In this document: piece by piece, positions 1 to 46,561 of the stretch
Layout: each line of letters begins with the position of its first letter
How positions within the stretch are numbered: position 1 is the stretch's first letter
Source: Macrostomum lignano
Lineage: Eukaryota
Reading direction: 5' to 3'
Assembly: GCA_002269645.1 (NCBI GenBank)
Contig: NIVC01001437.1
Location: forward strand, 1-52,295
DNA: 52,295 nt
Made by a program: the position numbers and the translations under genes
The notes under the pieces: model-generated
Told to the model about the DNA's origin: nothing
Databases searched by the model: none
The model's input: the letters and a program-made list of their open reading frames with translations, nothing else

Positions 1-228
1 TTAGCGCCGCAGGCTCTTATTTTAGCGCCGCAGGCTCTCATTTTAGCGCCGCAGGCTCTCATTTTAGCCGCGCCGCAGGCACTCATTTTAGCGCCGCAGG
101 CTCTCATTTTAGCGACGCAGGCTCTCATTTTAGCGCCGCAGGCTCTCATTTTAGCGCCGCAGGCACTCATTTTAGCGCCGCAGGCTCTCATTTTAGCGCC
201 GCAGGCACTCATTTCAGCGCCGCAGGCG
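1..228. repeat. 21-bp minisatellite (TTTTAGCGCCGCAGGCTCTCA)n, about 10 copies, truncated by the window start
   Basis: Unit repeated directly from base 1. Confidence 0.95.
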
Positions 229-368: not shown

Positions 369-1220
369 GTTGTGCTGGCGCTTAACTTTCCGCTAACCGA
401 GTAGACTAGTTAGTGCAATTTGAGTTCAATAGGCTCAAACTGAGTGTTTATTGCCCGATGAAAACGGCACCCAGGCCAAGAAGCGTCCCGGAGTCACTTG
501 CGTCGCCCCAGAGTCGATTCAGACGCGTTCGGATGACAGTTTAAATAGGAAAGAAGTGATTCTAACGACTCTGAACCATGAGGATGCACAGGCCAAGAGG
601 CGAACAAAGCGCAGCGAGGCGGCAACAGCGCAACGAAGCATTAAAGGGGGAGCGGCAAACGAACTCTCCACAAGTTGCGAGCAATTTTTTTTTCGTTTCA
701 AAAAATTGAGCGCAAAGAGTGGCGAGAGCGCAAAGACCGCGCGGCGGCATAAATAGGCAAGCCACTGAACGCGGCAGAGTAATGGACACATACAAGTCGT
801 CAAAAAAGTCGCAGAAGAAGCGTTTTAGCGTCATTTTAAAATCGTTAGTGCATCACTTCTGAGTTGATAAGCATGCATTTTCTATTTGCCCAGAAGTAAC
901 GATCCAGCAGGCTGTTTAAGGCTGGTAGTAACGACTCTGTGACGTGTCCAGAGCGCCTCAGAAGTGTTGCACTAACGATTCTGCAGTGACGCTAAAGCGC
1001 TTCTTCTGTGACGACTTTTCAGCGATTCCAGAACGCCGCTGAAACGCCGTAAATGTGACTCTGATTCATCGAGCGACGCAAATGCGCTTCAAACACAACT
1101 CAGTGACTCTAATGCGGCTCTACGGCTCCAGAATCGTTATACCGTCGCCCCAGAGTCGCTAGAGTCGCCCCAGAATCGTTTCAGAGTCGCAGAAAATAAA
1201 ACGCTTCAAAGTGATTCTGG

Positions 1221-1461
1221 GCACGCGAAGGCGTATTCAGCATGCCAGTGAAGTATGAGACAGACTAGGCCCATGGGCTAAGGTCTGCGATGCTTCACGC
1301 CTGCCCCTATCTTCAGCAGGTCAAGGCTGGTGGGAGGTCTGCACCCTCTATTTGCCTCTGGCAGCCGCAGACCCCCCCCCCCACGCTGTCTCGCAAGTCG
1401 ACCCAGGGTACTCGTCCCGCGTGTGTTCAAGGCAGTCCCTAGGGCTGCTGGACAGACTGGG
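1221..1461 (+). ncRNA. HDV-like self-cleaving ribozyme in the LINE 5' UTR (predicted)
   Basis: P1 GCACGC(G) 1221-1227 pairs with (C)GCGUGU 1418-1424, giving G-U at +1. P2 CCCAG 1402-1406 / CUGGG 1457-1461. P3 GG(G)/CC(C). L3 UACUCGU 1409-1415. P1.1 A1410-U1426 and C1411-G1425. P4 1431-1438/1442-1449. J4/2 C1453-AGA. Folded by eye, not tested. Confidence 0.78.
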
Positions 1462-1739
1462 CTCCGGCGCTGGCGACCCTATCCAGTGGCTTCGGCCGAA
1501 TTTGGGTATGCGGGTCTGGCTCGCCAACCTGCAGGCCGTGGTACTGCTCAACGTACTCTCTAATGCCTAAGGTGTTGACCGTGCCGATGGGCTGGAAGGC
1601 CGGGGAGTAGTCCGGTCGCAAGCGGTCCCCCTCCTGGTGTCGGGCCAGCCTTGAGGGTGCTATTGGCCTACTGCCCGGTCAGGTGGAGCGGCCGGGTGGG
1701 TACCGCGCCCCTTTGAGGGTAGCCCACCAACCTTTTATC

Positions 1740-3260
1740 ATGGCCTTCGAGCCGACTATGGATAAACAAGCTATTTCTAGGGATGGGGACCCTTCTAAAC
1801 CCCAACCTCAGTCCGAAGGACCGGCCGGCCCTGCTGGCAGATCCCAACCGACTGATTCAACTGTGGCAAAGGAAGGACCGGCTGGCTCTGCTGGCAGATC
1901 CGACCAGAGCTACCAAACTCAAAATACCCTAAGACCTGCCAGCTCCGCTGGTGGATCTAAGGGAACCGCGAGCTCTGAGCCTAAAGGACCGGCCAAATCT
2001 GGCAGATCCGATGAAGCTCAGCGGGCTCGGCTTGAGCGCAAACGCGCTAAACAACGCGCCAAAAGGCAGGCCAAGAAGGGAGCTGCGGGGGCCAAAGCGG
2101 CGGCGTCCACCATGGATGCTGAAGCGACTGGAGTCCCAAGGCAACCAGGCGGGCCGGCCGGTGGAAGCTCCAGTAGTTCAGCGGCGGCGCTCCCTGGAGC
2201 TGCTGCCGCGGCTGCTGAGGCCGAAACCACGGCGCAACAAATGGCCACTGCCAACAAGGAGGTTCCTTCGGGAGCTACCTTTGCGGCGAAGGCCAAGGCC
2301 AAAATCCCGGGAGTGATCATCCAAGGTCGCGACCAGGACTGGACCACTGATCAGCTTCAAAAAGTGTGGAGTGCTGTTGACTCCTATCTGATTGAGCTGA
2401 CTGTCGAGGAGGGAATCTCCATCGGCGTTGAGCGGATGGTGCTGCGAAGCACATTCGTTCTTATTGCTCCTAGCAGCGAGGAGGACGCTCGGCGGCTGCT
2501 CCAGCGGCTACCGACGGTCTCCTTGGATGCTGACCTTGGCGGAGCTCTTTTTCTTCGCGAGGGCCAGCGTCCAAAGACGATACCCTATGTGGTTTTCGTC
2601 CCTGCTAAGAGCACCGCAGCTGGACCAGACGTTATTCGCCGGGTCCTACTGCGTCTGAACCCCGACCTCCCTGCTAGTGGACTGGTGTATCACCGTAAAG
2701 TCCGCAGGGGGGAGACGGGCAACTCAATTGTCCTCGGCCTTTCCAGCACTTGGGCGAGTCGGTACCCTAATGGATCCTCTTTCCAGCTGGGTGCCCTCAA
2801 GCTCAAGTTGCGCCGAGGAAAGTCTGCCAAAGGGAAGGCTACTGCCAACCCCGGCATCTCCGGCAAGAGCGGGGCGCAGTCTAAGGCCCAAGGAAAGGCG
2901 CAAGCCGATCCCAAAGCCAAAGCTGCATCTCGCCCCTCTGCTAGCAGCAGTTCGGCGACCGCGGTAACGGCTCCGGCCGAGCCCCGGGAACCAAACCTGC
3001 CAGTCGGAGAAGGAGTTGAGGACGAGGCCGGGTCTTCGGAATCCGAGCTCTCCTCGGCCACCTTGGTGGGGTCTGAAGGTAAAGATGCAGGTGAGGAAGC
3101 TTCCTCCATCCTGTCATCGGAGCCTGAGGAGTCTGCTGGGGGGGCCGGTGGGGTGAGGAGGCCATGGACGTCGACCAACTCCCATCTCCCAGTCAAGCCC
3201 CAGCGGCCTGGGACGAGGACGATCTGTTGTCCAAGTCTCCTTGATGACCCTGGGCTCTAG
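1740..3260 (+). CDS. LINE ORF1 (gag-like nucleic-acid-binding protein; central domain resembles DUF4780-type ORF1s; no CCHC knuckle)
   Basis: First ATG at 1740 within the 525-aa track ORF, with an A/K/R-rich N-terminus (RARLERKRAKQRAKRQAKK). A missing G in the run at 3150-3153 would give an acidic end ...EEAMDVDQLPSPSQAPAAWDEDDLLSKSP* at 3244. Confidence 0.8.
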   Translation: MAFEPTMDKQAISRDGDPSKPQPQSEGPAGPAGRSQPTDSTVAKEGPAGSAGRSDQSYQTQNTLRPASSAGGSKGTASSEPKGPAKSGRSDEAQRARLERKRAKQRAKRQAKKGAAGAKAAASTMDAEATGVPRQPGGPAGGSSSSSAAALPGAAAAAAEAETTAQQMATANKEVPSGATFAAKAKAKIPGVIIQGRDQDWTTDQLQKVWSAVDSYLIELTVEEGISIGVERMVLRSTFVLIAPSSEEDARRLLQRLPTVSLDADLGGALFLREGQRPKTIPYVVFVPAKSTAAGPDVIRRVLLRLNPDLPASGLVYHRKVRRGETGNSIVLGLSSTWASRYPNGSSFQLGALKLKLRRGKSAKGKATANPGISGKSGAQSKAQGKAQADPKAKAASRPSASSSSATAVTAPAEPREPNLPVGEGVEDEAGSSESELSSATLVGSEGKDAGEEASSILSSEPEESAGGAGGVRRPWTSTNSHLPVKPQRPGTRTICCPSLLDDPGL

Positions 3261-3283
3261 CCAGATATTGCATTTAATACAGT

Positions 3284-6200
3284 ATGACTAAGCTCCACGC
3301 TGCCAAAGGAGCGACATTCTGTCTGCAAATAAATTTACAGCATTGCGTATCTGCGTCAGTAAATCTGATGAAGATTGCTGAGCTGTACAGGCCAGGCCTC
3401 ATCCTGATCCAGGAACCCTGGATGCGCAACGGTAAGTTGCCCAACATTCCCTCTGGCTACTCTGATTTTTATGTGTGTGGCCCGGGGAACAGCCGCCCTA
3501 GAGCGGCTATCCTCGCTGCTAGCCATCTCCAGGCTTGGCTGAGGACTGATCTCTCTGATGGAGACCTTTGCGTCATCCAATCTAATCATTTCTCTCCGCG
3601 TACGTGTCTTGTTGCCTCGGTTTATATCCCAGGCGACAGAGACCCTGCTCCCGAGAGTTTACTGCGCCTTGCGCAGTACTGCGAGTCCCAGAACGCTGAG
3701 CTGTGCTTAGGGGGCGACCTCAACGCGCACCACAAGCACTGGGGCAGCAAAGATACCAACACTAGAGGAGAGGAGCTTCTGGCCCTCATCTCTAACACAA
3801 ACCTCATGCTCTGCAACCGCGGCAGCACCCTACCTTTAATAATGGCAGATGGACCGAGGTCCTCGACGCCACACTCGTTACCCCAAGACTCTTTGACAGA
3901 GTCAAGGAGTGGAGAGTCTGGTCTGAGGAGCCCTCCCTGTCTGACCACTGCTTTATTGCCTTTAATATCGCGGACACTAAAACCCAGTCTCCGATCACTT
4001 GGAGACGCAATATCCGCAACACTGATTGGGCGGCCTACAAGGCTGCCCTTGATCTGCACCTGCAGGAACTCACGGACTTACGTCCGATTGAGACCTGCGA
4101 GGATGTGGATCATATGGCTGAGACGCTGACAGGTTGCATTATTGCAGCCTACGAAGCGGCTTGTCCTGCTCGCGCCTACAGAGGCAAGACCTCGGCGCCG
4201 TGGTGGAACCCGGAGCTGGGGAAACTCAGGCGGAAGGCCAAAAGCCTTCATCGCCGTGCCATGAAGACCGGAAACCCGGAGGACATGGAGCTTTTCCGGC
4301 AAGCCTCCCGCAATTTCAAATCTGAAGTGCGCAAGGCCAAGGAATGTAAGTGGCGCCAATTCTGCAATGAATTGGATCAAGACAGACCTACTTCTAGGCT
4401 TGTCAAGGCCCTTACAATGGACAAAATGTCCAAATTAGCCATGATCAAAAAAGATGATGGCTCTCTTACTAAAGACCCTGAAGAAGTGCTTCAGCATATG
4501 CTTAGCACATTCTTCCCGAGGGTACCTACTGCTAGACCGGAGCCCAACCATTCGATGGATGGAGCCACCCTAGCGGCGGGCATTGTCACTGAAGACCTAA
4601 TCGCTCGTGCGGTCAGAACCTTCAAACCCTTCAAATCTCCTGGACCTGATGGTATCTACCCTGTTCTCCTTCGTGAAGCAGCCAAGATACCCTCGTTCCT
4701 GAGACTCACCCGCAATCTTATGCGGGCCTCTATCCAGCTGGGATACGTTCCCAAAAGCTGGACTGAAGCTCGAGTAGTCTTTATTCCCAAACCTGGGAAG
4801 GGTGACTACCAAAGCGTCAAGGCCTTCCGGCCAATTAGCTTAACGTCAGCAATGCTTAAGCTCACTGAGAGGCTTATTCTCTGGCGGCTGCTCTCCTGCG
4901 AGCTGACAGCGATGCCCCTCAGCAATAATCAGCACGCCTTCCGTACCGGGAGGTCGACTGACAGCGCCCTGCATGCGATTGTCGAAAAGATTGAACGGGC
5001 GGTACTGGGTGACGGTTACGCCCTGGCTCTCTTTCTTGACATTGTTGGCGCCTTCGACAACGTTATCTTTGAAGCGTTTCAGAGGGCCCTTCAAAATCGC
5101 AAAGCTCATGCTACCCTCATACGGTGGATCATGTACATGATCTCCAACCGTACGGTCACTGCCCAACTTCTTGGGCAAACTGCCTCCACCAGAGTCTGTA
5201 AGGGTGGACCCCAAGGCGGAGTCCTCACCCCGACGCTCTGGAACCTGGTCATGGACGCTCTTCTGAGTGACTCCCGACCTGACCCCGTCTTCAAAGTCGG
5301 GTATGCTGATGACGTCACGGCCATTGTGGCAGGACCGTCTCCCAGCACGCTCAGGGATCTGATGCAGAGCTTTATCCGCAAAGCAGAATCCTGGGCCAAT
5401 GACAATGGTTTGGAACTCTCTGAGCCCAAAACCGTTGCCATTATGTTTACCAGCAGACTACGCTGGAACATACGTCCTCTGCAGCTCTACGGCAGAGATA
5501 TTGCCTTCGCGCACCAGACCAGATGTCTCGGGGTCACACTTGACCACCGGCTCAACTGGTCCTTCCACGTGAAAGCAAAAGCTAAGCGTGCCTCAGCCAT
5601 CCTGGCCCAGCTCCGACGAGCACTTGGCACTTCTTGGGGTCTATCCCCAAAGCGGCTTTGGTGGATCTATACTTCCGTAGTTAGACCTGCCATTACGTAC
5701 GCCTCTGTTGTCTGGGTTAGCGCTACCCAGGTCAAAAGCCATGCAGACCTGCTCAACACGATCCAAGGCAGAGCGTGTAGGCTCATCTGCAACGCCACCA
5801 GGTCCACGCCCTTTGCTGGCATGGGGGCCTTTCTTAATCTTCCGCCTCTTGACCTCTTCATCAGGGGTGAGGCGGCTAGAACGACGCGGCGTCTAATTGA
5901 TGCCGGCGTCAAATTCATTTACATGAGAGCACCTGCTAAGCGGAACCTTGTCCCGCATAGCGATCTGTGCCTCAACTTTCTCAACGAGTGTCAGGCCAAT
6001 CGCGTCTTCACCGATGGCATTGCCTCAACGCTCAACCTGAGACAGCGCTACTCCGTAGCTATCGACTCGCGCGATAACATCAATGACCATTGGAACCCTG
6101 GTGAGCTTCATTGCTACACCGACGGTTCTAAGCAGTCAGCCAACACCGGCTTTGGTGTTGGAATCTTTCTGAACGGGAGGGTCATCGCTACCCACGCTCA

Positions 6201-7022
6201 ATACACTGGGGTCAACTCCAGTGTTTTCCAAAATGAAGTTCTGGCCATCAGCTCCTGCACTGCAGAGCTTCTCGCCACTGGCGTTACTGGTAAGAACATC
6301 ATTTTCCATTCGGACAGCCAAGCTGCCTTGCACGCCATCAGTGGCTGCAGCACCAACTCTGCTACAGTCCTTGACTGTATCAAACTCCTCAATGTGTTGG
6401 GTTCCGCCAACAAAATTACCCTTAAGTGGGTTCCGGGGCATGTGGGGATCCGAGGAAATGAGTTGGCTGACACCCTTGCAAAAGTTGGTGCCTCCGGCTC
6501 CTCTCTCGGCCCCGAACCTCTTGTCCCGATTCCTGGCTGTGTCATCGACTCGCGCATCAAAGCGTGGATCAGGACTCAGCACCGCTCGACTTGGGCGAAC
6601 CGCACGAACTGCAGGCAATCCAGAGGCGCTGTCCCTCAGCCCTCTCACCAGCTCCGGAAGCTCCTCTTGCGCCTCTCGGCAGAGACATCCGGGCTGCCAC
6701 CATGACCCTCTCTGGTCACGGCTGCTTCTCCAGGCACCAGTACCTGCAGGGCAACGCCACCAACGCCACCTGTAGTTTCTGCAACTCAGGTGACGAAACC
6801 GCTGAGCATTTCGTCAGCATCTGTCCCGCCTTCACGCGGGCCAGACTCACTTACCTCGGGCCACACACATCTATTACTGAAGCGTGCAAACCCGAAAACT
6901 TTAATCAGCTCATGTGCTACCTTCGGGCCACCCGCAGGGCTGAACTCTCCTTTCCAGAGAGCACCATAGCTGCTGGCGACACTGGGGGACCTCCCTGGGC
7001 GGCGCCAACCCTCCGTCCATAG
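3284..7022 (+). CDS. LINE ORF2 polyprotein (APE endonuclease, reverse transcriptase, RNase H, CCHC), split into 3 frames by -1 shifts at ~3828 and ~6678
   Basis: APE: LQINLQH, LIQEPW, GGDLNAHH and (shifted frame) SLSDH. RT: KSPGPDG, FRPISLTS, QHAFR, FLDIVGAFD, PQGGVLTP, YADD. RNase H: YTDGSK, QNEVLAI, HSDSQAA, WVPGHVGIRGNELADTLAK. C-terminal CSFC...HFVSIC. Confidence 0.92.
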
Positions 7023-7395
7023 CGACGCGTCGGCCGTTCAGGGACTAGCGGAATGGGCGCCCGCGCCTTCCCGCTGTGTCCCCTCCGGGACAGCCCTGCA
7101 GCTAAGTCAAGTAAGTCAAGTCAAGATTCTGGGGCGACTCTTTGACGACTTTTTGGCGACTTGTACCGCGACATCTCGTCGTTTTAGAGGCGTTTAGAAT
7201 CACTTCTTTCCTATTTAACCTGTGTCGTCTGCAACGCGTCTAGAACGACTCTGGGGTGATGCAAGTGACTCCGGGCCGCTTCTTGTCCCAGGTACAGTTT
7301 TCATCGGGAATTCGCAAGAGATTGATAGAAAGTTGATAAGACGTTTCAAACCCATAAACTGAGACCCTCAGTTTGTGTATCCCCAACTGGAGATT

Positions 7396-7690
7396 GGGGT
7401 TTAGTCTAGTGATTAGAGCGTCGCACTCACGACTGAAAGGTCGGGGGTTCGATTCTCGACCTACTCAGAACAATTGTATCTTTGAGCAAAGCACTTAACT
7501 CTGCTTAAGTGCTTCAGTTCACCGAGCTGTAAAATGGGTACCAGCATTAGCTGGTGTAATTGAGGGTGTGGGCCCCCCCCTCAGTCCTTGGACTGAACAG
7601 CCGTACGCAGCCTTCAGATGCGCCGCACAATAGCTGCTGCTGAGCTGTCGTTTGTACATCTGCTCATTAGGGCAGGTGTAATCAATAATT
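7396..7690 (+). mobile_element. tRNA-derived SINE with CORE-like central domain (copy 1)
   Basis: A box TAGTCTAGTGATT and B box GGTTCGATTCT, then TCTTTGAGCAAAGCACTTAAC...GTGCTTCAGTT...CTGTAAAATGGG, and an AT-rich tail near 7685. A second copy lies at 24.3-24.5 kb. The 3' boundary is approximate. Confidence 0.85.
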
Positions 7691-8660: not shown

Positions 8661-9547
8661 AGAAATGGATTAGAATCAAAAATGTGTCAAATTATGTGAA
8701 AAGTTTTTGAGCCGTCAAGTACCATATTATGTAGTTGAACGACTGGTCACATCGCAGTAGTTCCATCGCCTCACCGGAAGCGCCATAGCAGAAAATTGCA
8801 GCCTTGACGTCATCTGGCATGTCTTCAGAGCTTCTCGTGCTTACTGCATGTACGAGTACAGTGTGGGTAGCACCAGGCCGTTGAGCCGCCTCTCCGGTTG
8901 GCATCGACCCACCGGACTGTACGTTACAAGACGCTTAGCTGGGACATCGATTGACCCAATGATGCATTGAAACAACAAACTCCTTCTTCCTACAGCACAC
9001 AGCCCTGGAGATAGCAGAAATTGAGTTCTGAAGTTGGTTGTTTGATGGAGAGCGCTTTCACGTGACTGCACAGCTCTATTTCAAAGCTTGATGTCTCAAT
9101 CGAAATGTTAATGCAGGGCGCGGTCAAAATGGTGTATGGTGGCGTCGATTTAAGTCATCTTTTGTCCCTTCAGTTATCTCAGAAGCTGAATTCGGTAAAA
9201 TGCTTTGAGAGCCATCCAATTTCGTTAATTTCCGCTAAAAGCATCGAACCACAGCTTTTGTCGTGTTAAAACGGCTGAACTAAACATGTATAAAAACAAA
9301 AAGCCGGCAAATGGAAATCGCCCAGTGTTGCACGCACCATCATTGACACGCGAAAATTGGGCGGGGCTACTGCTTGGGGCGATGAAAAAAGCGCTATTTA
9401 AACCCATAAAACTGACGTTCTCAATTGCAGGGCCGAGTGCTGGATAAGCAGACTATCAACTAGAGCTTCAAGTTGAAGACTATTGCTATCTTATTTTCCG
9501 ATGAGCGAAAGTGTCACAAGCTCTGTTAATCCTTGCTCAAAGTAGTC

Positions 9548-10636
9548 ATGAGTAACGCGTCAAGCGCTGTCAACTATATTTTTGTGGACTCTGTCGACTA
9601 TATAGTGTTGGATTGTCAAAGTGGGGACCCGAACAGAACGGCGACTTGCACTGTCAACACCGTCCTTGGCGCCATCACGGGACTGATTCTGCCTGTTTTC
9701 ATCGTCTCCGGTCTCGTGTTCAACGCTCTCATAGTGTACATCAACCTGGTCAAACAGTCGTGGACTCGACAGAATGTGTACATCAGCATAATTGCGGTCA
9801 CCGACAGCTGCAACATCATCGTGAACGGCTTCATGTGGATGTTCTTGGCCAAGGGTCTGCCCTGGTTAACCAACGGATCCGTCGGTTATGTACATCTTAA
9901 CGACGGAGACGTGCAGTGTAGATTTGCGAAATATTTTGAGCACCTGTGCCACCTAACATCGACTGCAATGTTTCTGCTAATGGTTACCGACAGGACTCTA
10001 AGCCTGTACTTTCCGTTCAAATTTCATAGCATCAGCGGAAAGGCTGCGATGAAGGCCGGGTTATTAGTGATCCTGGCCTGTATGGTTGTCACCCTTCCCA
10101 TCGCCTTCATTTTTCATTGGTTGATTTTTGATATCTACGTAGTCTGCTACTTCAGCTTCCACGAAATGTTACCATGGCAACAAACCATTCTATACTACTA
10201 TTCGGCTTTGCTTTACTACCCACCGGCCCTTTTACTGGCGATTATTTTCATTGAGAACTGCTTCCTGATTCACAAGGTACGAGAGATCACCGCCAATAGA
10301 AAGAGGCTGGGCTCTGCTAAGGAATCTGATGACGGGCTAGTAAACACAGTGATCTGCCTCGCTCTGTCGGCCTGTCTGCTTTTGTCTGCCTCGCTGACCT
10401 TCTTTGCCCGAACCAGTGAGTACGTTCTAACGCTGCTTTTAGGCGAAATCGAGAATGAAACCTCCATCGTGTTGTGGGGAATTCACGATATCGGCATCTC
10501 GACCATCATCATTGGCCAGTCCACCAACTGGATCCTGCTGGTGTGGAAAAATGCCAAGTTCCGTCGGCTTCTCTTGGAGACGGTAAAATTCTGGAAGCCG
10601 GTGGATCAGAAGACGGCTACCACCTCCACATATTGA
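9548..10636 (+). CDS. Intronless rhodopsin-like (class A) orphan GPCR, peptide-receptor/flatworm-expanded type
   Basis: Seven hydrophobic segments; TM1 GLVFN; TM2 IAVTD; ECL1-TM3 Cys (CRF); TM3 end TDRTLSLYFP; helix 8 NAKFRRLL; N-terminal NAS sequon. First ATG at 9548 (the track ORF starts at a TTG, 9533). Confidence 0.9.
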   Translation: MSNASSAVNYIFVDSVDYIVLDCQSGDPNRTATCTVNTVLGAITGLILPVFIVSGLVFNALIVYINLVKQSWTRQNVYISIIAVTDSCNIIVNGFMWMFLAKGLPWLTNGSVGYVHLNDGDVQCRFAKYFEHLCHLTSTAMFLLMVTDRTLSLYFPFKFHSISGKAAMKAGLLVILACMVVTLPIAFIFHWLIFDIYVVCYFSFHEMLPWQQTILYYYSALLYYPPALLLAIIFIENCFLIHKVREITANRKRLGSAKESDDGLVNTVICLALSACLLLSASLTFFARTSEYVLTLLLGEIENETSIVLWGIHDIGISTIIIGQSTNWILLVWKNAKFRRLLLETVKFWKPVDQKTATTSTY

Positions 10637-22938: not shown

Positions 22939-25900
22939 TCAAGCCGTCAGCACGCTCGACTGCAGGTAGGCAGCATCGTCCACGGCGTCGGTGAGCTGCG
23001 CCTCGGAACTGGAAGCCGCCAGTGATGGACAGCCTGCAGGTTGTGGGGCCGAAGGGTCAGGCCATTCTTAAAGGGAATTCAGTCAGGCCATTCTTAAAGG
23101 GAATTCAGTCAGGCCATTCTTAAAGGGAATTCAGTCAGGCCATTCTTAAAGGGAATTCAGTCAGGCCATTCTCAAAGGGAATTCAGTCAGGCCATTCTTA
23201 AAGGGAATTCAGTCAGGCCATTCTCAGAGAGGGAATTCAGTCAGGCCATTCTCAGAGTCAGAGAGGGAATTCAGTCAGGCCATTCTCAGAGTCAGAGAGG
23301 GAATTCAGTCAGGCCATCCTCAGAGTCAGAGAGGGAATTCAGTCAGGCCATTATCAGAGTCAGAAAGGGAATTCAGTCAGGCCATTCTCAGAGTCAGAGA
23401 GGGAATTCAGTCAGGCCATTATCAGAGTCAGAAAGGGAATTCAGTCAGGCCATCCTCAGAGTCAGAGAGGGAATTCAGTCAGGCCATTATCAGAGTCAGA
23501 GAGGGAATTCAGTCAGGCCATTATCAGAAAGGGAATTCAGTCAGGCCATTCTCAGAAAGGGAATTCAGTCAGGCCATTCTCAGAGTCAGAGAGGGAATTC
23601 AGTCAGGCCATTATCAGAGTCAGAGAGGGAATTCAGTCAGGCCATTCTCAGAAAGGGAATTCAGTCAGGCCATTCTCAGAAAGGGAATTCAGTCAGGCCA
23701 TTCTCAGAAAGGGAATTCAGTCAGGTGATTCTCAGAAAGGGAATTCAGTCAGGTCATTCTCAAAGGCAATTTAGTCAGGCGATTCTCAAAATAAAATTAG
23801 CCGGGCGATTCATAAAGGCAATTCAGTCAGTCTCACTTAACAAAGGAGCCACGTTAACAAAGACCTTATTTAACATACCAGCCTGGAAGTGAGCCTCCAG
23901 CAGCATTCGGTCTTTGTAGCGGGCCTTGCAGCCGCCGCACTCATACAGGGTGTCACCGCCAGCGGCCACGGCGGCCGCAGTTGTCTCAACAATGAAAGCG
24001 GACATCGGCTTGGAGTGTACAGCGGTGTAGTGCTCGTACAGTTGCTCCGGCCCGGCGAACATGGCCGCCTCTTGGGCAGACTTGTTGCCAAGCTGTTGTA
24101 CTCTGGCAGACACGCAGAGACGACAGGGCACGGGACCTTCCGGCAATGATTTCGGATTGGTGTGAACCGACCAGATGTGAGTCTTGTTGAGCGACTCGGT
24201 CTTGCAGTTGAGCTGGCAGACTGGGCAGCACACGATCTGGGTGGAGTTGGCGATGGTGATGTACTGGATATAGGCTACTCAGTGGCACCCAGAGGGGGGG
24301 GGGGTCGTCGCCACACACCCCCTCAATCACCCCAGCTAATGCTGGCACCCATTTTACAGCTGGAATGAACTGAAGCAATGCAGAGTTTTAAGTGTCTTGC
24401 TCAAGGACACAAATTGTTCCAGTGGGGGGATCGGGAATCGAACCCCGACCTTCAAGTCGCAAGTCCGACGCTCTAACCACTAGGCTAAAAACCCTAGCTG
24501 AAGTAGAAGTTGAAACTAGCATAAAATTACCTTTTTATTCAGCTGTGTCAGCGTAAAACTTGGGATTAATGATGGGATGCATTTGACTAACTGACAATTT
24601 AGTTTTCAGCAGTGCATTTCTATTCCAATTCCCATTCCCCCCCCCCCCCGAGTCAACTACGACTACTAGAGCTTGCATATACCTGCCGCCACTCATTGGG
24701 ATGATTGCGCTGCAGATGCAGCTGGCCAGACATCAGCTGATCGAAGCTCTGTGAGCACAGGGTGCACGCGTACAGAATCTGCTGCTGCTGCTGCTGCAGC
24801 GGAGCGGTGGCCGCCGCTACCAATTCGTCTTGGGAGGCGAACTCCGGGTGCAGATCGGAGAAATGCTTCAGCAACAGAGGCAGGTCCGTATAGGTCTCGT
24901 TACAGAGGCCGCAGCAATAAGCGTAGCCTTCGCCAGCCGAGGCCTCCGCCTGCTCCTGTTGCTGTTTGGCGTCGCTGCTGCCAGAGTCGCCAGCGGTTCC
25001 GGCGGTGACAACGGCTCTGCTGCCATCCGAGCCGTGATTGGCGGTCACGTGTTCCTGGGAGAGGGAGGTGGGGCGGCGGGCGGACTGCACCTTTGATCAT
25101 TTATTGACCACTGCCTAAGCAGCTGGGAGGCTGGCCCAGAAACTGAGGATCTGGGAGGCTGGCCCAGCAACTGAGGATCTGGGAGGCTGACCCAGCAACT
25201 GATGATCTGGGAGGCTGACCCAGGAACTGAGGATCTGGGAGGCTGGCCCAGCAAGTGAGGATCTGGGAAGCTGACCCAGCAACTGAGGATCTGGGAGGCT
25301 GACCCAGCAACTGAGGATCTGGGTGGCTGGCCCAGCAACTGAGGGTTTGGGAGGCTGACCCAGCAACTGAGGATTTGGAAGGCTGGCCCAGCAACTGACA
25401 TTCTGGGAGGCTGGCCCAGCAACTGAGGATCTGGGCGGCTGGCCCAGCAACTGAGGATCTGGGCGGCTGGCCCAGCAACTGACACTGTGGGAGATTAGTG
25501 AACCAGTAAATGAGGACCCAATAGAGCTGTGGCTCTCTACTGTATTCTGTATCCAGAAAACTGCAAAGCGAACTAAGGCACTACAACCTCATGCACACAC
25601 ACACACCTGCAGCGTGTCAAAGTACACGAACAGAGCGCCACAGTGCGGGCAAGCGTGAGGCGGCTGGTCAAGGTGTTCAATGCGCAGGTGATCGGCCAGC
25701 CAGTTGCAGCAGCGAGCACCGGTGAACATCTTGCCGCAGGCGTTGCAAGCAACCCGACGCCTGTCGACTGGCGAACGCAGTGGAATGTCGGCGCGCAGCA
25801 GGCGGGTGTGATGCTGCTGCTGCTGCTGCGACACCACGGCACTGCGGACAGCGACACCACCGCCACCGCCAGCAGGGCTGACATTCTCGGCATCGCCGAT

Positions 25901-39117: not shown

Positions 39118-42100
39118 TTAGCGGCTATCAGAATTCGCGGATGAGCACATTCTCAGCAAACGCTTTTGCTCATGCAACTGCGTCTGCACTTTTTGTGCAG
39201 AAAAAAGGCTCACGAAATTGTTGTAATCGCAACTTGATACTCGCAAATCTGCAAATGCACGAACTCTACTCACCGCAGTATAAAATAATCCAGCTGGAAT
39301 AGCTTTCCTGGCGCCTCCTTTGCTAAACGCCACGTACGCTTTTGGAATTGTAAGTCCTTGGCTCTTGTGAATCGTACTAGCCCAAGCCAATCGTAGTGGA
39401 AATTGTTGACGCGACAATTGGGCTCCTCCTTTAAACTTTTCATTCGTTACTGACAGAATTGGCACTACACGAATTGCACGATTATCTTGTACAATTGCCC
39501 CCATTGCTGGGCCAGAATAATTGTCAAATTCAACCCAAATACAATCTGGCCAATCCTTTGGTGATTGCCTTCCAGGAGCGTAGCAAATTCCTCGTACAGT
39601 TCCAACTGATCCATTCACAAGTCCATTGCGTACTGACAGATTTCTAGTTAGCATTACTCGAGCACCAATACACAAATAGAGTCGCTTCTCCAGATTCGTA
39701 TCCGATTTTTTATGTTCCTTCTTTTTGCCACACAATTTTGCTTCGTCTCCTTTACAAATTGCGTTAATTTGCCGCACAGGATTCAATTCGGAAACCATCT
39801 TTCCCAATAGCATGTAGTTGCGATTTCTCACATCCTCGTTAGTGTGATATAAAAATGTACACCCGCTTTGGAAACCTTCAGGCAAAAGGTCGGGAGCATA
39901 GACGCGACAATTGTTCATCAACGAATTCCAGCAGGCTTCGTCGGCCTTGCCTTCGCGAAGTTTATCCAACAACTGGGCGAATTCCGTATCGTTTGCTTGT
40001 CGGACTTGTTCTGTCAGATGCACAACCTTTTTGAACTCCATGTACAATTTATAGCCTTCAGATTTCAATATATCGTGCTTCTTTTGATTTGGATTGTAAA
40101 CGTACAGTTGCGTGTCCAAAACTGGAGGCAATTGAAACACGTCGCCAATTAGGATTACAGATCGACCACCAAAACTCTGTTTACTGTGTTCTGGAAACAA
40201 TTCGCGCAAACGAGCATCCACCTTACGGAGTAACCTTTGGCCAAGCATGCTAAATTCGTCAATAAAAATGTAGCGCACATCTTTCCACTGCTCTTGCATC
40301 TCCATTAGGGATTTCTTGCCAACACCAGCACTAAAATTTACATTCAATTTCAAAGCCGAGTGCAAAGTTTCGCCTGCAATATTGAAAGCGGCTACGCCTG
40401 TTGATGCCATAATTCTGCATCTTGATTCTCCAATCAACCGACGCAATGTAGAAATCAAGTAGCTTTTTCCAGTTCCAGCGCTACCATACAAAATTGCTTT
40501 GAGAGGCTCCGGCTTTTCGCCTTGGTTTTCTTCGGCTAGTCTTGAAAGCTGCAAATGACTTTCAATTAGGTTGTACATTTCTCGCTGCCGAACATTAAGC
40601 GATTCAACACTGTTTATCGGCATGTCAGCGACCTCTCTTGCGCCAAGTTTTAGGTCGCTACTTAAAAACGCCTTTGCTTCTCCAACCGTTGGAAACTGGC
40701 CGCCACTAGCTGCGCTCCAGTCAAAATTTTCTGGCGGCTTTGGCAATTGATCTTCTGGACAGGCCAATAGATTTCTCTCGCGATGAAGTGCCCCCACTGC
40801 AACCATCCAATCTTCTTGCTCTTCGTGCTCATAAGTTGGCTGAGCAGCAGATTGCGCATTTGCGTTGGTCATTTCGGGTAGCTCCGCAACTGCTTCGACT
40901 TCTTCGTCAGCTTCGTCGTTGCGCAAATCGTCCAAATTGGGCAGCTGCAGCTCGCATCGATTCTCAGCAGGCATGGCTTCGTACGCTTGCTGCCAGCTTG
41001 TGTGCAAACCTTTGGCTTCTCGCTCATTTCGCCAACAACTGTACAACAAAACCTGCTGCCGATAATAGCCTTCGCGTCTTTCGTCTGATTGCTCATTCGG
41101 TCGAAAAAATGGACTGATTAGCAAAACTACTTGTTTCGGCCTTTTTGTGCACCTCCCATTAGGGCTGAGACAGTAGTCGGAAAAGAAACGAAACATTGTT
41201 ACATTTTCCAAATTCTTTGCACGCTTTGAATACTTGTCGCAACTATTCCTGCAAACACCCTTTTCCTCCACTGCGCGGGTTTCGCCAGTCTGAACAAAAA
41301 CAAATTCTCGCGAACCCTTGTACATTGACGTCTGCAATAGCAAATGCATTGCCTCTTGCGCCGAATAATCACGCGCTCCAACTTGCGCCATCAAGTGTTG
41401 TTGTACAACACGCCTTGCAGTGTTGCTACGCTGAAAATTGTTATCGGCATTCTGTTCTGCATTATCTTCCAACTCCTTATGAAGACGCTTTGTCAGCTCC
41501 GCCATATAATCCGACTCCTTTTCGCTTTTTGTCGCATACTTGATCAAATAGCGAATCAAATTCTTCACGGACGAAATCATTTGAACATCGACATTGGCTC
41601 TCCACATGCACAGCAACTGCGGACTGTGAGAAATCATTCGCTCGTCGTTGCGCTGCGTCTCAACTTGCCAATTTAAACGGGATACTCGCTTTGCAACAGT
41701 CTTTTCCTGCGGCTCGCGCGGATACTTGAATCGGCACTCTTGTTTGCCTTTTACTGTTCGCAAGCACTTTTTACTGCAAATAGTGTGCCTCTCTGTCAAA
41801 TGCGAAATTAACTGCAAATCTTGCTTGTCATTTTCAATCTCTTCCGGTTTCAGTTGAGCTGGATGACCTTGACCTGCTAAACTGCCATTCAAAACTTGAT
41901 TTCCATAATCCGATTCGTCCATGGCCAAATTCCAACTACAGATGTACTTGTCAACAAAGCTCGTCAATTCTTCTGCATTCAATGTATTCGATGTCACATC
42001 AACACCATCTGGCATCCAAATGCAACCGTGAACGTGTGGACTTCCGCGACTCTGATATTCTATGCGAAACCAATAATCGTTTACTTTCCAGTGCTCGACC

Positions 42101-45100
42101 AAAAAACGTTTCAAACATGTTTCAAATCGCAACCAAAACACAGTGTCTGCCATTCCGGGATCTTTTTGCAACTTTGACAACATTTCTGCTCTTAGTTCTA
42201 CATTGCTTTCATATTGCTCTGCATCGATTCCCCAGGCATGCTGCAACTCTGGCCAATGTACATCTGCTGCCGATAGTGTCACGAAAAAATGAGGAACACC
42301 AAGCGTTCGAATCATGGCTTCCAATTGCCGTCCTTTACTCTGCCAATAAGCGCTTGTGCCTCGCAAATCTGATGCTCGAACTGACACGCTAGCCAATACT
42401 GCCGGGTCATTTAGTGCTTCAATCATTTCCTTGGCACTTAATCCAGCATACTTGTTGTCGTGTACAAACACGCGACCAACTTCCAGCGCCCTCCAACGCA
42501 TCACCATATTTTCAATGTAAAATTTAAACCGCAAATCGGTACGAAATCTTGGACACCGGAATTGCATCAAATGCTTTGCATAGTCGCCCAAACTTAGTCC
42601 AAAATTACGTGGCGTACTATAATCTCCTGCTCCATCCGGAAAGAGATGAGGATAAGCCAATGTAAAATATCCTTCATCCTGAAATTCGTTTACCGGCTCG
42701 TTGCTTCTTGCTGGCCATTTCAATTTTTCACTCAAAAATTTGTCTCGTACTGCCGATTCCAATCGACGCAAAGGAGTCTCCAACAGCGAACTAATTGTTT
42801 CCTCGAGCTCGTTCGTCTCGTCCGCATTTTTTTCTACTTGTTGCTGCAATCGCTCAGCTCTGGCTGAGCCGCCTTCTTGCTGTGCCGCCTCGAAATTCAC
42901 TTCATTGTCAGACTGCATTTCGACAATCATACCTTCTACTTGATGAGCATAACCATCTTCAGGCAGATGTAGCAACGCATCATTATTCATTGAAACCTGA
43001 TACTGTCTAAAGTACTTGTTGTTTGCCATTAAATAGCGCATCGCATTAGTCACTTTGTCGCGTCGAACTCGCAAATTGTTCATTGTGCCGCTTTGCGCTT
43101 CTCCAGGCTGAACACGGGCTCTTTCGTCGTACATTAAAACAACTGGCAGAGATCGTCTTGGCAGCTCTCGCAAAACGTGCGACTGATCTTGAGGCAACAT
43201 GATTCCGTGTCCTCTCGATTTTGTTTGCTTTTGGGGAAAAATTTGTACCACAACAATAACCGACAAAACTGGCGAAATCAACATTTGCTCTGCTACACTC
43301 AAATCTTGCAAATCTTCTGGCTGCTCCAACATCGGAATCGCATTGTTTTCTTGGCTAAACGATTTCGGCTCATTGTCATCTCTGAAACAACGATCGCACA
43401 TGTCTTCAGAATCGATGCTAAAATATTTTCCAGGAAACTTTTCCCTACACACGTAGCACTGTTTCAAATGTGATACTTTTGTTATGTTTTCATTGAAAAA
43501 GTCTTGCCTCATCTTTTTGAACTGGTCTGTGAACGGATTGCGAAGGCACTTTGGCAGATTAGGATCTCCGATTTCATCTTCAACAATTGGAGCATCTTGA
43601 GCGCTCTCTTCTGAAGTGCTGCTCTGCGGAACATTTTCTTTAGCTGGCTGCTGCTCCATTGTAGGCCGCTTTCTGGGTGACGAACGGATCGCTTCATCAG
43701 GCTTCTCCTGAGTAGCACGTGTCTTTCGTGGTGATGAATACGTAGAAGTAGCTGGAATATTATCAGACTGACGTTTATCTTGCTGCTCCTGCTGCAAAGG
43801 TGCCGTCTTCCTAGGCGACGATCGAACGGGTTCGCAGATATGATTTTCTGCGTTTGTCAATCTCTGTTTCCGTGGTAAAGAATTTGCATAGTTGACCACT
43901 TGCTGCTGGTTTTTCAAACGCTCGCTGCGACGAGTAGGAGCACTTGGTACAACGTCGCTCTTCTTTTCTCGACCTCTTCCTTTTTCCAAATGGCAAGAAA
44001 CGCTTGAAACCGCCGAAACTGAGTCGCCACAACCGATGCAACTGCAACATGGTGCTCTCCGAGTGCGACTGCTTCTTCTCAATAAGCTCTGACCAGATAC
44101 ACTAGAGGCTGCAACAGACACAGACTCTAATGTGTTTGCTTTAGCGCTCAGTCGACTACTCCGACGCGTAGCGCAACTTGCCTTCCCAACATCCTTTTTA
44201 CGCCGACTGCGCCGCGGAACATTTGATGGCACGGACTCTGACACACGATCACTTTTAACTGACTCTGACACATGCTCAATTTCAACTGACTCTGCGCTAT
44301 CCTCCGCGTCAAGATCGACATTCCAATTCCAGACAGAGTTGTTCCGATCCCGAAGCACTTCATATGAATTCGGATGCGCAAACAAACTCGTATTATTTTC
44401 CAAGGACTTTGCTTGATTTCTACAACGTCCCTTCCAATGCCTACTTTGAACTCGGGTCCAGTCTGCAACCTTTTCAAAAGGCGTCATTGGTGGAGCTGGA
44501 GGTGGCATCATTACAACAGGATCTTCGACAACATGAACATTCTCGTTGAGAGGGGGCATTTCCACATTCTTGGCGCTCAAATCTCCTTGGCCAGTCGGCC
44601 GAACTGAGCTTGCTTCATTAACTTCCAAATCATTGACACGAACGATTTCGTAGTGTTGACTACCAGGATTAAACAACAATCGAATAGTAGCCAAACGTTC
44701 TCCAATATTCGGTCGGGAATAATGGCCAGGCCGCGCTAGATTAAGCATGTTTGACTGATAAATAAACACTTCTAGCCGCAACAGTTCACCAATTAGTTCT
44801 GGAACTCCGCATGGCACGTACATACGGGGACGCCTTGTATCGTCGCGCACTTTTTCCCAATTCAGTCCTGTTTGCATAATTCTTTCCTGATTATTGACAT
44901 CGCGATGCACCCATTGCTCGAATTCTGCAGCAACCGCATCTCGAAAATCTTCTACGCTTAGCGATTGATAGGCGGAAAAACCTGGCAGTTCTTGTAATTG
45001 TCTCAATATGGCCGTGAAAAAACAGTTGCCGTCACCTCGTACATTCTCAACGCGACACGAAGAAAAAGGAACCCATACAGGTTGGACTTGTACAGCAGCA

Positions 45101-46561
45101 GTTACATGACCTTCGGCAAAATCCATTGCAGTAGCACCTGTTTCATCTGTAAAAGAATACAACTCTTAAACAGTGAGGTATGATAATTTTAAGGAATTGA
45201 GCATTAATTGTATTTTGCACAAGTCGTAAACACTAAAATCTAATTTTCAATATTCGCAAGCAAAGTCAGATGTAAGAAAGAAAATTAACTTGTACTATGC
45301 ATAGAAATTCAATAAAAAATAAAACTCTCACCAGCACTCAAGTAGCCTATAAGTTGCTCATTGTAAGCAGCACCAGAATTGGGCACTTCAGCATCACCTT
45401 CGACCACGGGGTATTCCGAAGCAGCCAGAGCGTCGGCCAGAGCAGCATCATGTTCAGCTAGCAGGGCAGCCAGACCAGCCTCGTCCAGCTTAATCACAGA
45501 CTCAGTTTTAGCAGCAGCATCAGCAGAAGCACCAGCTTTAGTCCCAGCAGCGGCAATAGAAGAGGCAGCAGCAGCTTCCGGTTGTACATCTGGCTCTTGA
45601 ATCTGTTCTTCGCCAGCAGTTAAATCACCGACAGCAGCAACTTTAATATTATTCTTGGAGCGGCTCCAGTTTTTCTTCTTCGGCCGTCCGCACTTTTTCG
45701 CACCTGTTTAAAGTCACAGTAAAAAAGAAATTTATAAATCTACCTATATATATATATATATATATATGTCTGTCCATCTATTTCGCTCTAGAGCGTGCCA
45801 TTCTTGATCAATTTTGATAGCGTTTTTTCTAAACTATTGCAGATTTTGCACTGATTATACAGTGGTCAAAATTTCTTAAATCTGCTCAAATTCTAAGGGT
45901 GTTAAACATTCGAAAATAGAGTTTCTATAATTATTTTAATGATCTGTCAAACAAGGTCAGATTCCAATTGAATTTATTCCCTTTGTCGAAACTATTCAGT
46001 CGAAACTACTCAGTCGAAACTATTGAGTTCACACTATTCAGTCAAAACTACTCAGTCAAGATTATTAAGTCTAAACTATTCAGTTGTAACTATTCAGTTG
46101 AAATTATTCTGTCTGTCAAAACTATTCAGGCGAAACTATTCAATCTAAACTATTGAGTGTGAACTATTGATTTGAGCTGCGTCAGTTAAGAGTTTGAAAA
46201 ATTCACATTTTTAGACATCTGAAAAACACTTTTTTACAGAATTACCTGTGAACTATTCAGTGTGAGTTATAGTGTGAACAATTGAGATTTATTGTTTGGT
46301 AAATAAATTGTGTAGTGCAGGAACTTTTTAGTTTGTCTGTTGCCCAAATGGGCAGCCAAGAATGCTAGTAAAAGCTGGTTTCCTAAGGTGTGAATATTAA
46401 TAATAAAGGTAGGATTGCTTTGAAACTATTCCTGAAAGTAGCACCTATCACCTGCAAGTTGCAACAAATGTACAAAACTTACTATTGGCAGCAACAGAAG
46501 AAGCACTTGTATCCTTGTTAATGCTAGTGTTGTCCTTGATGCTGTTTTTGTCGTTGCCCAT
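39118..46561 (-). CDS. Helentron/Helitron2-type Rep-helicase with N-terminal OTU protease domain (~2159 aa, 3 coding exons)
   Basis: Exons: 46561-46483, 45703-45332, 45146-39118 (6480 nt, both introns phase 1, GT-AG). OTU: GDGNCFF...QHYE. Then CYVC...CDRC, a DUF6570-like region and a Helitron_like_N region (AYPHLFPDG). HUH Rep: FFVTLSA, EYQSRGSPHVH, YLIKYATK. PIF1: GSAGTGKS, FIDEFSM, GDVFQLPPV, QFPLRLAWASTIHKSQGLT. Confidence 0.92.
45975..46170. repeat. ~14-bp tandem motif (AAACTATTCAGTCG), about 13 copies, in intron 1 of the Rep-helicase gene
   Basis: Direct degenerate repeats. Confidence 0.9.

What the first reader, a model, noticed from the sequence alone, without database searches (positions are those of the whole stretch)
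1221..1461. HDV-like ribozyme whose predicted cleavage G is exactly the LINE's 5' junction
Seen: all HDV-fold elements occur in order, and the +1 G(-U) of P1 is base 1221, the first base after (or last base of) the TSD. L3 UACUCGU fits UNCNCGY. The usual C-G of P1.1 is replaced by a compensating A1410-U1426 next to C1411-G1425, and C1453 sits in a CAGA J4/2. The ~175-nt J1/2 holds its own hairpins (GUGAAGUAU/AUGCUUCAC, CCUGC/GCAGG, GGUCUGC/GCAGACC). Known: HDV-like ribozymes process 5' ends of R2, RTE, L1Tc and Loa-clade Baggins elements. Inference: this element self-cleaves out of read-through host transcripts. Caveat: G1406/C1418 are shared between P2/P3/P1, so either P3 is 2 bp, J4/2 is 5 nt, or a homopolymer base is missing.
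Basis: partly seen in the sequence, partly recalled or inferred. Interest (0 to 1): 0.85.

Follow-up and report, generated by a model that had tools for sequence, protein, structure and literature searches.

The report
HDV-like ribozyme at a flatworm LINE start
The first ~240 bases of a flatworm (Macrostomum-type) LINE retrotransposon fold into a hepatitis-delta-virus-like self-cleaving RNA whose predicted cut site is the element's first base; this is a well-supported new example of a known trick that lets such elements trim themselves out of longer host transcripts.

Summary
G1221, the +1 base of P1, lies at the boundary of a 7-9 bp target-site duplication around a 5.9-kb APE/RT/RNase H LINE (1221-7125).

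It is more than chance. A loose HDV descriptor anchored on base 1 of the 5'UTR hits 5 of 20,000 dinucleotide shuffles.

The only close relative whose 5' end I could fetch is L001 (ORF2 58% identical, ribozyme region 52% identical). It has the same fold, and its contig starts exactly at the homologous G. All 15 core pairs (P1, P1.1, P2, P3) are kept in both sequences. Five show changes on both sides, including both P1.1 pairs. Slid controls give 0-1.

The 175-nt J1/2 is a conserved peripheral domain with a closing helix (P1.2) and three hairpins.

Against: no Rfam HDV model matches. More distant relatives (35-45% identical) show no such motif. This copy has two ORF2 frameshifts and a J4/2 one base longer than canonical. 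Cleavage is untested.

Verdict: a new member of a known kind, of moderate interest.

The parts
1214..1220 (.). Left copy of the target-site duplication, ATTCTGG. G1213 and G1221 may also belong to it.
   Evidence: the same ATTCTGG follows the 3' tail at 7126-7132.
1221..7125 (+). Full-length non-LTR retrotransposon (LINE). 5'UTR 1221-1739; ORF1 1740-3260; ORF2 (APE, RT, RNase H) 3284 to about 6980 in three frames, with frameshifts near 3829 and 6679; 3' tail of AAGTCAAGT-like repeats 7100-7125.
   Evidence: Pfam Exo_endo_phos_2, RVT_1, RNase_H; tblastn frames 2, 1, 3 against P0002.
1221..1461 (+). The whole HDV-like ribozyme. The predicted scissile bond is 5' of G1221.
1221..1226 (+). P1 5' strand, GCACGC. 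Pairs with 1419-1424, with G1221•U1424 at the cleavage site.
   Evidence: 6 of 6 pairs kept in L001 (GCCUGC/GCAGGC), two with changes on both sides.
1227..1401 (+). J1/2 peripheral domain. P1.2-like closing helices 1231-1233/1392-1394 and 1238-1241/1385-1388. Hairpin Ha 1248-1256/1290-1298, with inner stems 1261-1266/1282-1287 and 1268-1271/1276-1279. Hairpin Hb 1299-1304/1316-1321. Hairpin Hc 1332-1342/1367-1376, with tip 1352-1356/1360-1364.
   Evidence: L001 has a 9-bp P1.2 (11-19/154-162) and the same three hairpins with compensatory changes.
1231..1234 (+). Partner of an alternative 5'-terminal hairpin (1223-1226/1231-1234, loop GAAG) that competes with P1.
   Evidence: RNAalifold picks it, with the same two compensatory changes (L001 3-6/11-14).
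1402..1405 (+). P2 5' strand, CCCA. Pairs with 1458-1461. G1406-C1457 is a possible fifth pair.
1406..1418 (+). P3 (GGG 1406-1408 with CCC 1416-1418) enclosing L3 UACUCGU (1409-1415). A1410 and C1411 form P1.1.
   Evidence: P3 is invariant in L001. L3 positions U1, C5, G6 and U7 are conserved.
1419..1424 (+). P1 3' strand, GCGUGU.
1425..1426 (+). P1.1 3' strand (G1425-C1411, U1426-A1410).
   Evidence: both pairs changed on both sides in L001 (U181-A195, C180-G196).
1427..1452 (+). UCAA junction (1427-1430; GCAA in L001 and, from my memory of the sequence, in genomic HDV), then the P4 hairpin (1431-1449), then GGA.
   Evidence: P4 differs in sequence and length in L001 (201-226) but is a hairpin in both.
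1453..1457 (+). J4/2, CAGAC, with the candidate catalytic cytosine C1453.
   Evidence: L001 has C228 in CUGC at the equivalent place.
1458..1461 (+). P2 3' strand, UGGG.
7126..7132 (.). Right copy of the target-site duplication, ATTCTGG.

Best explanation

Shown:
- The sequence can form the nested double pseudoknot.
- The pseudoknot is anchored on the element's first base.
- The pairings are maintained by compensatory change in a diverged relative.

Inferred:
- When the element is transcribed as part of a longer RNA, the first six bases pair with 1419-1424 (P1).
- The 175-nt J1/2 domain folds on itself (P1.2 plus three hairpins) and brings P1 next to P2/P3.
- C1453 in J4/2 and a Mg2+ held by the L3/G•U pocket catalyse attack of the 2'-OH of base 1220 on the phosphate 5' of G1221.
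- The upstream RNA leaves with a 2',3'-cyclic phosphate. The element RNA starts at G1221 with a 5'-OH, so each copy is templated from exactly unit-length RNA whatever promoter drove it.
- A short hairpin (1223-1226/1231-1234) competes with P1 and may slow cleavage or cap the processed 5' end.

This particular copy has two ORF2 frameshifts, so it is probably no longer autonomous.
For: - All helices are present in canonical order.
- The descriptor anchored on base 1 hits 5 of 20,000 shuffles of the window UTR and 8 of 20,000 for L001.
- All 15 core pairs are paired in both sequences. Five have changes on both sides, against 0-1 in slid controls.
- Of 81 possible 6-bp stems in the window RNA, only 4 stay paired in L001, and P1 is one of the two with two compensations.
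- Overall identity of the region is only 52%, while the L3 bases U/C/G/U, the CAA junction and the J4/2 cytosine are kept.
- The unconstrained minimum-energy fold of L001 1-237 already contains P1, P1.2, P3 and P4.
- The target-site duplication puts the junction at 1220/1221, and the L001 contig starts at the homologous G.
- Large structured J1/2 domains that 'pinch' P1 and P2 are known to activate HDV-like ribozymes (PMC4908430).
- 5'-terminal HDV-like ribozymes are known in other LINE clades (PMC3774820, PMC6765202).
Against: - No Rfam HDV-type model matches the window or L001, even at E<=10.
- Covariation rests on only two sequences.
- In the window the nested part of the HDV fold is 4.6 kcal/mol above the unconstrained minimum, before counting P2 and P1.1.
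- P2 is only 4-5 bp. J4/2 is one base longer than in L001 and (from memory) genomic HDV.
- L001 has G-C instead of G•U at the cleavage site and no adenines in J4/2.
- A competing 5' hairpin covaries equally well.
- Relatives at 35-45% ORF2 identity show no such motif upstream of ORF1.
- No cleavage or 5'-end data exist.
Confidence: 0.75

Rival explanations
1. The family does carry an HDV-like ribozyme, but this copy's version is catalytically weak or dead. It would be a relic in a decayed insertion: a longer J4/2, a weak P1.2, a short P2 and two ORF2 frameshifts.
For: - Frameshifts near 3829 and 6679.
- The window P1.2 is 3+4 bp against 9 bp in L001.
- J4/2 is CAGAC against CUGC.
- The HDV-compatible fold is 4.6 kcal/mol above the minimum in the window but equals the minimum in L001.
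Against: - All core pairs and the candidate catalytic bases are intact.
- The window keeps the G•U wobble and the A-rich J4/2 that L001 lacks.
- The frameshifts could be assembly indels.
Confidence: 0.2
2. The conserved pseudoknotted 5' RNA is structural rather than catalytic. It could be a binding site for the element's proteins, a translation-initiation structure, or the RNA image of an internal promoter that starts transcription at G1221. The resemblance to HDV would then be topological only.
For: - The J1/2 hairpin tip is 88% identical between elements that are 52% identical overall, which suggests sequence-specific recognition.
- An exact start at base 1 fits an internal promoter just as well.
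- R2's 5' pseudoknot also binds R2 protein, and L1Tc's first 77 nt are both promoter and ribozyme (PMC6765202, PMC3383444).
- No Rfam match.
Against: - The features kept are the ones needed for catalysis: P1 starting at base 1, a 2-bp P1.1, U...CG in L3, and a C right after P4.
- In the known cases, binding and promoter roles coexist with cleavage rather than replace it.
Confidence: 0.15
3. The match is chance: a GC-rich structured 5'UTR happens to satisfy a permissive descriptor.
For: - Loose cores are frequent: 29 in 104 kb, and in 8.6-12.5% of shuffled UTRs.
- A second P1 partner exists at 1240.
- Whole-region folding energy is not exceptional for the window (z = -1.0).
Against: - The terminal anchoring has p about 2.5e-4 and 4e-4 in two diverged sequences.
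- Five compensated pairs with none broken.
- P1 is a rare survivor among the possible stems.
Confidence: 0.05

Closest known systems
HDV-like ribozymes at the 5' end of non-LTR retrotransposons: Drosophila R2; R4/Dong; RTE (drz-Agam-2 family); baggins (PMC3774820, PMC6765202)
   Same: - The ribozyme occupies the first ~200 nt of the element.
- The first base of P1 is the element's first base, so cleavage removes all upstream co-transcript.
- The junction shows 1-nt microhomology with the target (G of GGGG). This is as expected when cleavage is at the element end and second-strand priming uses chance microhomology (model in PMC3774820).
   Different: - The host is a free-living flatworm.
- The element has APE, RT and RNase H plus a separate ORF1. 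R2 has a single ORF with a restriction-like endonuclease, and RTE has no RNase H.
- It is not site-specific.
- No sequence similarity to the Rfam drz/HDV models.
drz-Agam-2-1 and other 'large' HDV-like ribozymes with a P1.2 peripheral domain (PMC4908430)
   Same: A long J1/2 closed by a helix (P1.2) next to P1 and P2, which can pinch the two stacks together. L001 has a 9-bp P1.2.
   Different: - Here J1/2 is 163-175 nt with three hairpins, one of which is nearly invariant in sequence.
- The window's P1.2 is interrupted (3+4 bp).
L1TcRz / Pr77 of Trypanosoma cruzi L1Tc (PMC3185411, PMC3383444, PMC4035085)
   Same: [quoted passage not shown]
- The same bases may also act as an internal promoter.
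- Flanking sequence causes conformational switching.
   Different: - L1TcRz is a minimal 77-nt ribozyme that starts with C.
- The present one is about 240 nt, starts with G•U, and no promoter activity is known.
Genomic HDV ribozyme and the mammalian CPEB3 ribozyme
   Same: Comparison with the genomic HDV ribozyme is made from my memory of its sequence:
- Same helix order.
- G•U at the cleavage site.
- 3-bp P3.
- L3 of the form U-N-N-N-C-G-Y.
- 2-bp P1.1.
- (G/U)CAA before P4.
- C-N-R-A after P4.
   Different: - P1 is 6 bp, not 7.
- One P1.1 pair is A-U (U-A in L001) instead of C-G.
- J1/2 is 175 nt instead of 2 nt.
- There is one extra base between the catalytic C and P2.

Membership tests
HDV-like self-cleaving ribozymes (structure-defined family) | Nested double pseudoknot with elements in the order P1, J1/2, P2, P3, L3, P3', P1', P1.1, P4, J4/2, P2' | tested here: met
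   Also met in relative L001.
HDV-like self-cleaving ribozymes (structure-defined family) | The cleavage-site nucleotide is the first base of P1, typically a G•U wobble | tested here: met
   G1221•U1424. L001 has G1-C194 instead. L1Tc-type members start with C (PMC4035085).
HDV-like self-cleaving ribozymes (structure-defined family) | Catalytic cytosine in J4/2 just 3' of P4, about 3 nt before the P2 3' strand | tested here: inconclusive
   C1453 and L001 C228 are present. Spacing to P2 is 3 nt in L001. In the window it is 4 nt, or 3 nt if G1406 pairs with C1457 and P3 shrinks to 2 bp.
HDV-like self-cleaving ribozymes (structure-defined family) | 3-bp P3 closing a 7-8 nt L3 whose 2nd and 3rd bases form a 2-bp P1.1 with the bases after P1; U and C-G kept in L3 | tested here: met
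   both P1.1 pairs are compensated. L3 is UACUCGU in the window and UCUCCGU in L001.
HDV-like self-cleaving ribozymes (structure-defined family) | Helices supported by covariation among homologues | tested here: met
   15 of 15 pairs kept, 5 changed on both sides, slid controls 0-1.. Only two sequences are available.
HDV-like self-cleaving ribozymes (structure-defined family) | Mg2+-dependent site-specific self-scission giving a 5'-OH and a 2',3'-cyclic phosphate | not testable with these tools
   Needs an in vitro transcription and cleavage assay.
Rfam HDV-type families (HDV ribozyme, CPEB3, drz-Agam and F. prausnitzii models among the 4227 in Rfam 15) | A covariance-model match at or near the gathering score | tested here: not met
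   No HDV-type hit at gathering score or at E<=10 in window 1100-1800, window 1390-1475 or L001 1-300. These models cannot encode the pseudoknot, and the 175-nt insert is penalised. The family is described as having only about five conserved nucleotides (PMC4870747).
LINEs that process their 5' end with a terminal ribozyme (R2 / RTE / L1Tc / baggins type) | Ribozyme +1 coincides with the element's 5' junction | tested here: met
   The target-site duplication ends at 1220/1221. The L001 contig begins at the homologous G.
LINEs that process their 5' end with a terminal ribozyme (R2 / RTE / L1Tc / baggins type) | Ribozyme conserved across copies and relatives of the element | tested here: inconclusive
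   Present in L001 (58% ORF2 identity). No other copy in the window. Not detected upstream of ORF1 in relatives at 35-45% identity (L011, L013, L014, L163-L165).
LOA clade (baggins) | Phylogenetic placement of the RT with LOA reference elements | not tested
   No reference LINE sequences were on hand. The APE-RT-RNase H architecture and a best solved-structure match of the endonuclease to TRAS1, which I know to be an R1-clade element, fit the I/R1/LOA group only broadly.

The most novel reading that the evidence does not exclude
The ribozyme may be a regulated or dual-function 5' module. A nearly invariant J1/2 hairpin (1253-1293) and a covarying alternative 5' hairpin (1223-1226/1231-1234) would then form a switch or protein-docking site. 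This would couple self-cleavage to binding of the element's own proteins, or to internal-promoter activity as in L1Tc Pr77. It would be the first such case described in a flatworm LINE of the RNase H-bearing group.
Probability: 0.2. Interest if true: 0.6.

Novelty: new member of a known kind. Interest (0 to 1): 0.45.

Why it matters
- It adds a flatworm APE/RT/RNase H LINE lineage to the short list of retrotransposon groups that define their 5' end by an HDV-like ribozyme. This supports the idea that the strategy is widespread, or repeatedly acquired, among LINEs.
- Macrostomum lignano is a transgenic regeneration model, so the ribozyme could be tested in vivo. Its large conserved J1/2 domain is a natural case for studying how peripheral domains tune HDV-like catalysis.
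- For genome annotation, it gives a precise 5' boundary marker for this repeat family.

Tried and rejected
- Rfam scans: the whole window at gathering score, and three short stretches at E<=10. No HDV-type hit.
- Other copies in the window by blastn: none.
- Exact look-up of the window's ORF1: not on record.
- ORF1 homology searches with a single sequence and with a 5-member profile: only chimeric M. lignano gene models without DNA, plus one distant JGI protein.
- Pattern scan of JGI metagenomes with the conserved J1/2 motif: 8 hits, all unrelated contigs that look bacterial.
- Core-pattern scans of GTDB genomes and IMG/VR: GTDB matches all in records titled as bacteria or archaea, taken as chance without reading the loci; IMG/VR hits not examined.
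- tblastn-confirmed scan of IMG/VR with P0002: nothing.
- The contig of the other 58%-identical relative, P0001, had no retrievable DNA.
- Contigs L010 and L012 lack 5' ends.
- The L011/L013 family has a defined 5' end (GGGCATGC...) but no terminal-anchored HDV fold.
- L014 and L163-L165 gave no full descriptor hit.
- The alternative P1 strand at 1240 was rejected because it is not conserved in L001.
- A hidden coding explanation for the 5'UTR conservation was rejected: all three frames carry 3-7 stops in both elements.
- Ruminski et al. 2011 and Webb & Luptak 2011 could not be read because they are not held.

Full report
**What is at the locus**

Window 1221-7125 (+) is a full-length non-LTR retrotransposon.
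- ORF1 runs 1740-3260 and has no Pfam hit.
- ORF2 starts at 3284 and carries an apurinic-type endonuclease, a reverse transcriptase and RNase H.
- ORF2 is read in three frames, with shifts near 3829 and 6679 relative to its closest intact relative P0002. This copy is therefore broken, or the assembly has indels.
- The 3' end is a short AAGTCAAGT-like repeat tail ending at 7125.
- The element is flanked by (G)ATTCTGG(G) at 1213/4-1220/1 and 7125/6-7132/3.
- It sits inside a ~950-bp inverted-repeat element, with arms 454-565 and 7194-7308.
- The best protein matches are Macrostomum lignano models at 79-98% identity, so the window is from that flatworm or a very close relative.

**Checking the observation**

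- P1: GCACGC 1221-1226 with GCGUGU 1419-1424, with G1221•U1424 at the base.
- P2: CCCA 1402-1405 with UGGG 1458-1461.
- P3: GGG 1406-1408 with CCC 1416-1418.
- L3: UACUCGU.
- P1.1: A1410-U1426 and C1411-G1425.
- P4: a hairpin at 1431-1449.
- C1453 lies in CAGA(C).
- The three J1/2 hairpins appear in unconstrained folds.

**Is it more than chance?**

I wrote a deliberately loose descriptor: 3-bp P3, 7-8 nt L3, 2-bp P1.1, at least 4-bp P2, a P4 stem, and a C 3-5 nt before the P2 3' strand.
- The core alone is common: 29 sites on both strands of the window, and in 8.6% of dinucleotide shuffles of this 5'UTR. The core by itself proves nothing.
- Requiring that the six bases after P3 also pair with the first six bases of the element leaves 5 of 20,000 shuffles.
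- Of the 29 loose cores, only this one has the U...CG signature in L3.

**Related sequences**

No second copy lies in the window. The one close relative whose 5' end could be fetched is L001.
- L001 is a 6.5-kb Logan contig from run ERR14788467.
- Its ORF2 is 58% identical and its ORF1 central domain 34% identical.
- Its first 240 nt align with window 1221-1461 at only 52% identity, yet it has the same architecture:
  - P1: GCCUGC 1-6 with GCAGGC 189-194.
  - P1.2: a 9-bp closing helix, 11-19 with 154-162.
  - P2: CUCAGA with UCUGAG.
  - P3: GGG with CCC.
  - L3: UCUCCGU.
  - P1.1: C180-G196 and U181-A195.
  - GCAA, then an 11-bp P4.
  - G227, then C228 in CUGC.
- It passes the same descriptor, with 8 of 20,000 shuffles.
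- The contig begins exactly at the G homologous to 1221. That fits either an RNA 5' end or a repeat boundary in the assembly graph. Either way it marks this G as the first base of the element, which resolves the one-base ambiguity of the target-site duplication.

**Covariation**

- On the MAFFT alignment, all 15 pairs of P1, P1.1, P2 and P3 are standard pairs in both sequences.
- Five pairs changed on both sides: two in P1, both in P1.1 and one in P2. One pair changed G•U to G-C. None is broken.
- Sliding the 3' partners by 1-3 columns gives 20-55% pairing and 0-1 compensated pairs.
- As a control for deriving the structure from one sequence, I listed all 81 possible 6-bp stems in the window RNA. 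Only four stay paired in L001, and P1 is one of two with two compensations.
- The single-stranded positions expected to matter are conserved: U, C, G and U of L3, the CAA before P4, and the C after P4.
Its A7 cannot pair with C188, so P1 is 6 bp and P3 is 3 bp. The window then has a 5-nt J4/2 (CAGAC) against CUGC in L001.

**The J1/2 domain**

RNAalifold and single-sequence folds give the same three hairpins in both elements, with further compensated pairs.
- For L001 1-237, the unconstrained minimum-energy structure is already P1 + P1.2 + P3 + P4 (-127.2 kcal/mol).
- In the window, the same nested part costs 4.6 kcal/mol over the minimum, before P2 and P1.1 are counted.
- A closing helix that pinches P1 against P2 is known to accelerate large HDV-like ribozymes by up to about 1000-fold (PMC4908430).

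Two features remain unexplained:
- The tip of the first hairpin (1253-1293) is 88% identical between the two elements.
- A short 5'-terminal hairpin (1223-1226/1231-1234; L001 3-6/11-14, possibly extending to C2-G15) covaries just as P1 does and competes with it.

**Evidence against**

- No Rfam HDV-type model matches either sequence at any threshold tried. This is expected for a pseudoknotted family said to have only about five conserved nucleotides (PMC4870747), and with a 175-nt insert. It is still a failed test.
- More distant relatives show no such motif. The L011/L013 family (45% identical) has a mapped 5' end but no terminal HDV fold. Four others at 35-38% gave no descriptor hit.
- All pattern scans of public collections returned only unrelated hits.
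- The covariation rests on two sequences, and cleavage has not been measured.

**Mechanism (inferred)**

- Transcription reads in from upstream. The element's own start could also serve as a promoter, as in L1Tc (PMC3383444).
- The RNA folds, and C1453 with a bound Mg2+ catalyses scission 5' of G1221.
- The element RNA is released with a 5'-OH and no flanking sequence.
- The one-base overlap between the element's G and the target's GGGG is the kind of microhomology junction predicted when cleavage is at the element end (PMC3774820).

**Comparison and verdict**

This works like the 5' ribozymes of R2, R4/Dong, RTE, baggins and L1Tc (PMC3774820, PMC6765202). It meets the structural definition of an HDV-like ribozyme. 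It is not a member of any Rfam sequence family.

I found no report of ribozymes in Macrostomum LINEs in the held literature. In another flatworm, Schistosoma mansoni, no ribozyme had been linked to its non-LTR elements until twister variants were reported (PMC8501958).

It is a new member of a known kind: solidly supported computationally, of moderate interest, and readily testable.

Noticed in passing
window 1-227: Tandem array of a 21-nt unit, TTAGCGCCGCAGGCTCTCATT: 10.7 copies at 92% match.
   Followed up: no
window 454-1220 and 7126-7308: The LINE is nested in a ~950-bp inverted-repeat (MITE/foldback-like) element. Arms 454-565 and 7194-7308 are 86-97% complementary. There is an internal palindrome at 808-863/957-1012 and a 20-nt repeat at 1128-1190.
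   Followed up: partly
window 1253-1293 (L001 33-73): The tip of the first J1/2 hairpin (UAUGAGA...AGGCCCAUGGGCUAAGGUCUGCGAUGC) is 88% identical to L001, while the ribozyme as a whole is 52% identical. This suggests a sequence-specific partner, such as a protein, a tertiary contact or a promoter element. There is no Rfam match.
   Followed up: partly
window 1223-1234 (L001 2-15): An alternative 5'-terminal hairpin uses the P1 5' strand (ACGC-GAAG-GCGU). It covaries between the two elements exactly as P1 does. It may be an inactive conformer or a cap for the processed 5' end.
   Followed up: partly
window 1462-1739: Further conserved blocks in the 5'UTR downstream of the ribozyme: GGGGAGTA.TCCGG near 1613-1627, TTGGC.TACTGCC near 1663-1676, and GGTGGGTAC near 1695-1703. 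They are not coding, since all frames carry stops.
   Followed up: no
window 3829 and 6679: Two frameshifts in ORF2 relative to intact P0002 (frames 2, 1, 3). Neither lies in an obvious homopolymer.
   Followed up: partly
window 7395-7470 (+) and 24424-24494 (-): tRNA-like sequences. The second scores 29.4 bits against Rfam tRNA, but ARAGORN calls neither. They are probably heads of tRNA-derived SINEs.
   Followed up: no
window 39118-45162 (-): An uninterrupted 2014-aa ORF with Helitron_like_N, PIF1 helicase and DUF6570 domains. This is an apparently intact Helitron Rep/Hel gene.
   Followed up: no
window 9533-10636 (+): A 367-aa ORF with a borderline rhodopsin-family 7TM match (30.4 bits, cut-off 30.5). 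One M. lignano UniRef model (P0122) fuses a GPCR domain with this LINE's ORF1, probably a gene-model chimera.
   Followed up: no
L164 1619-3400; L165 770-2086: ORF1 of relatives at 35-38% identity carries Pfam DUF4780. Two members of the ORF1 alignment of closer relatives match it weakly (E = 0.003). DUF4780 may therefore be the ORF1 domain of this LINE group.
   Followed up: partly
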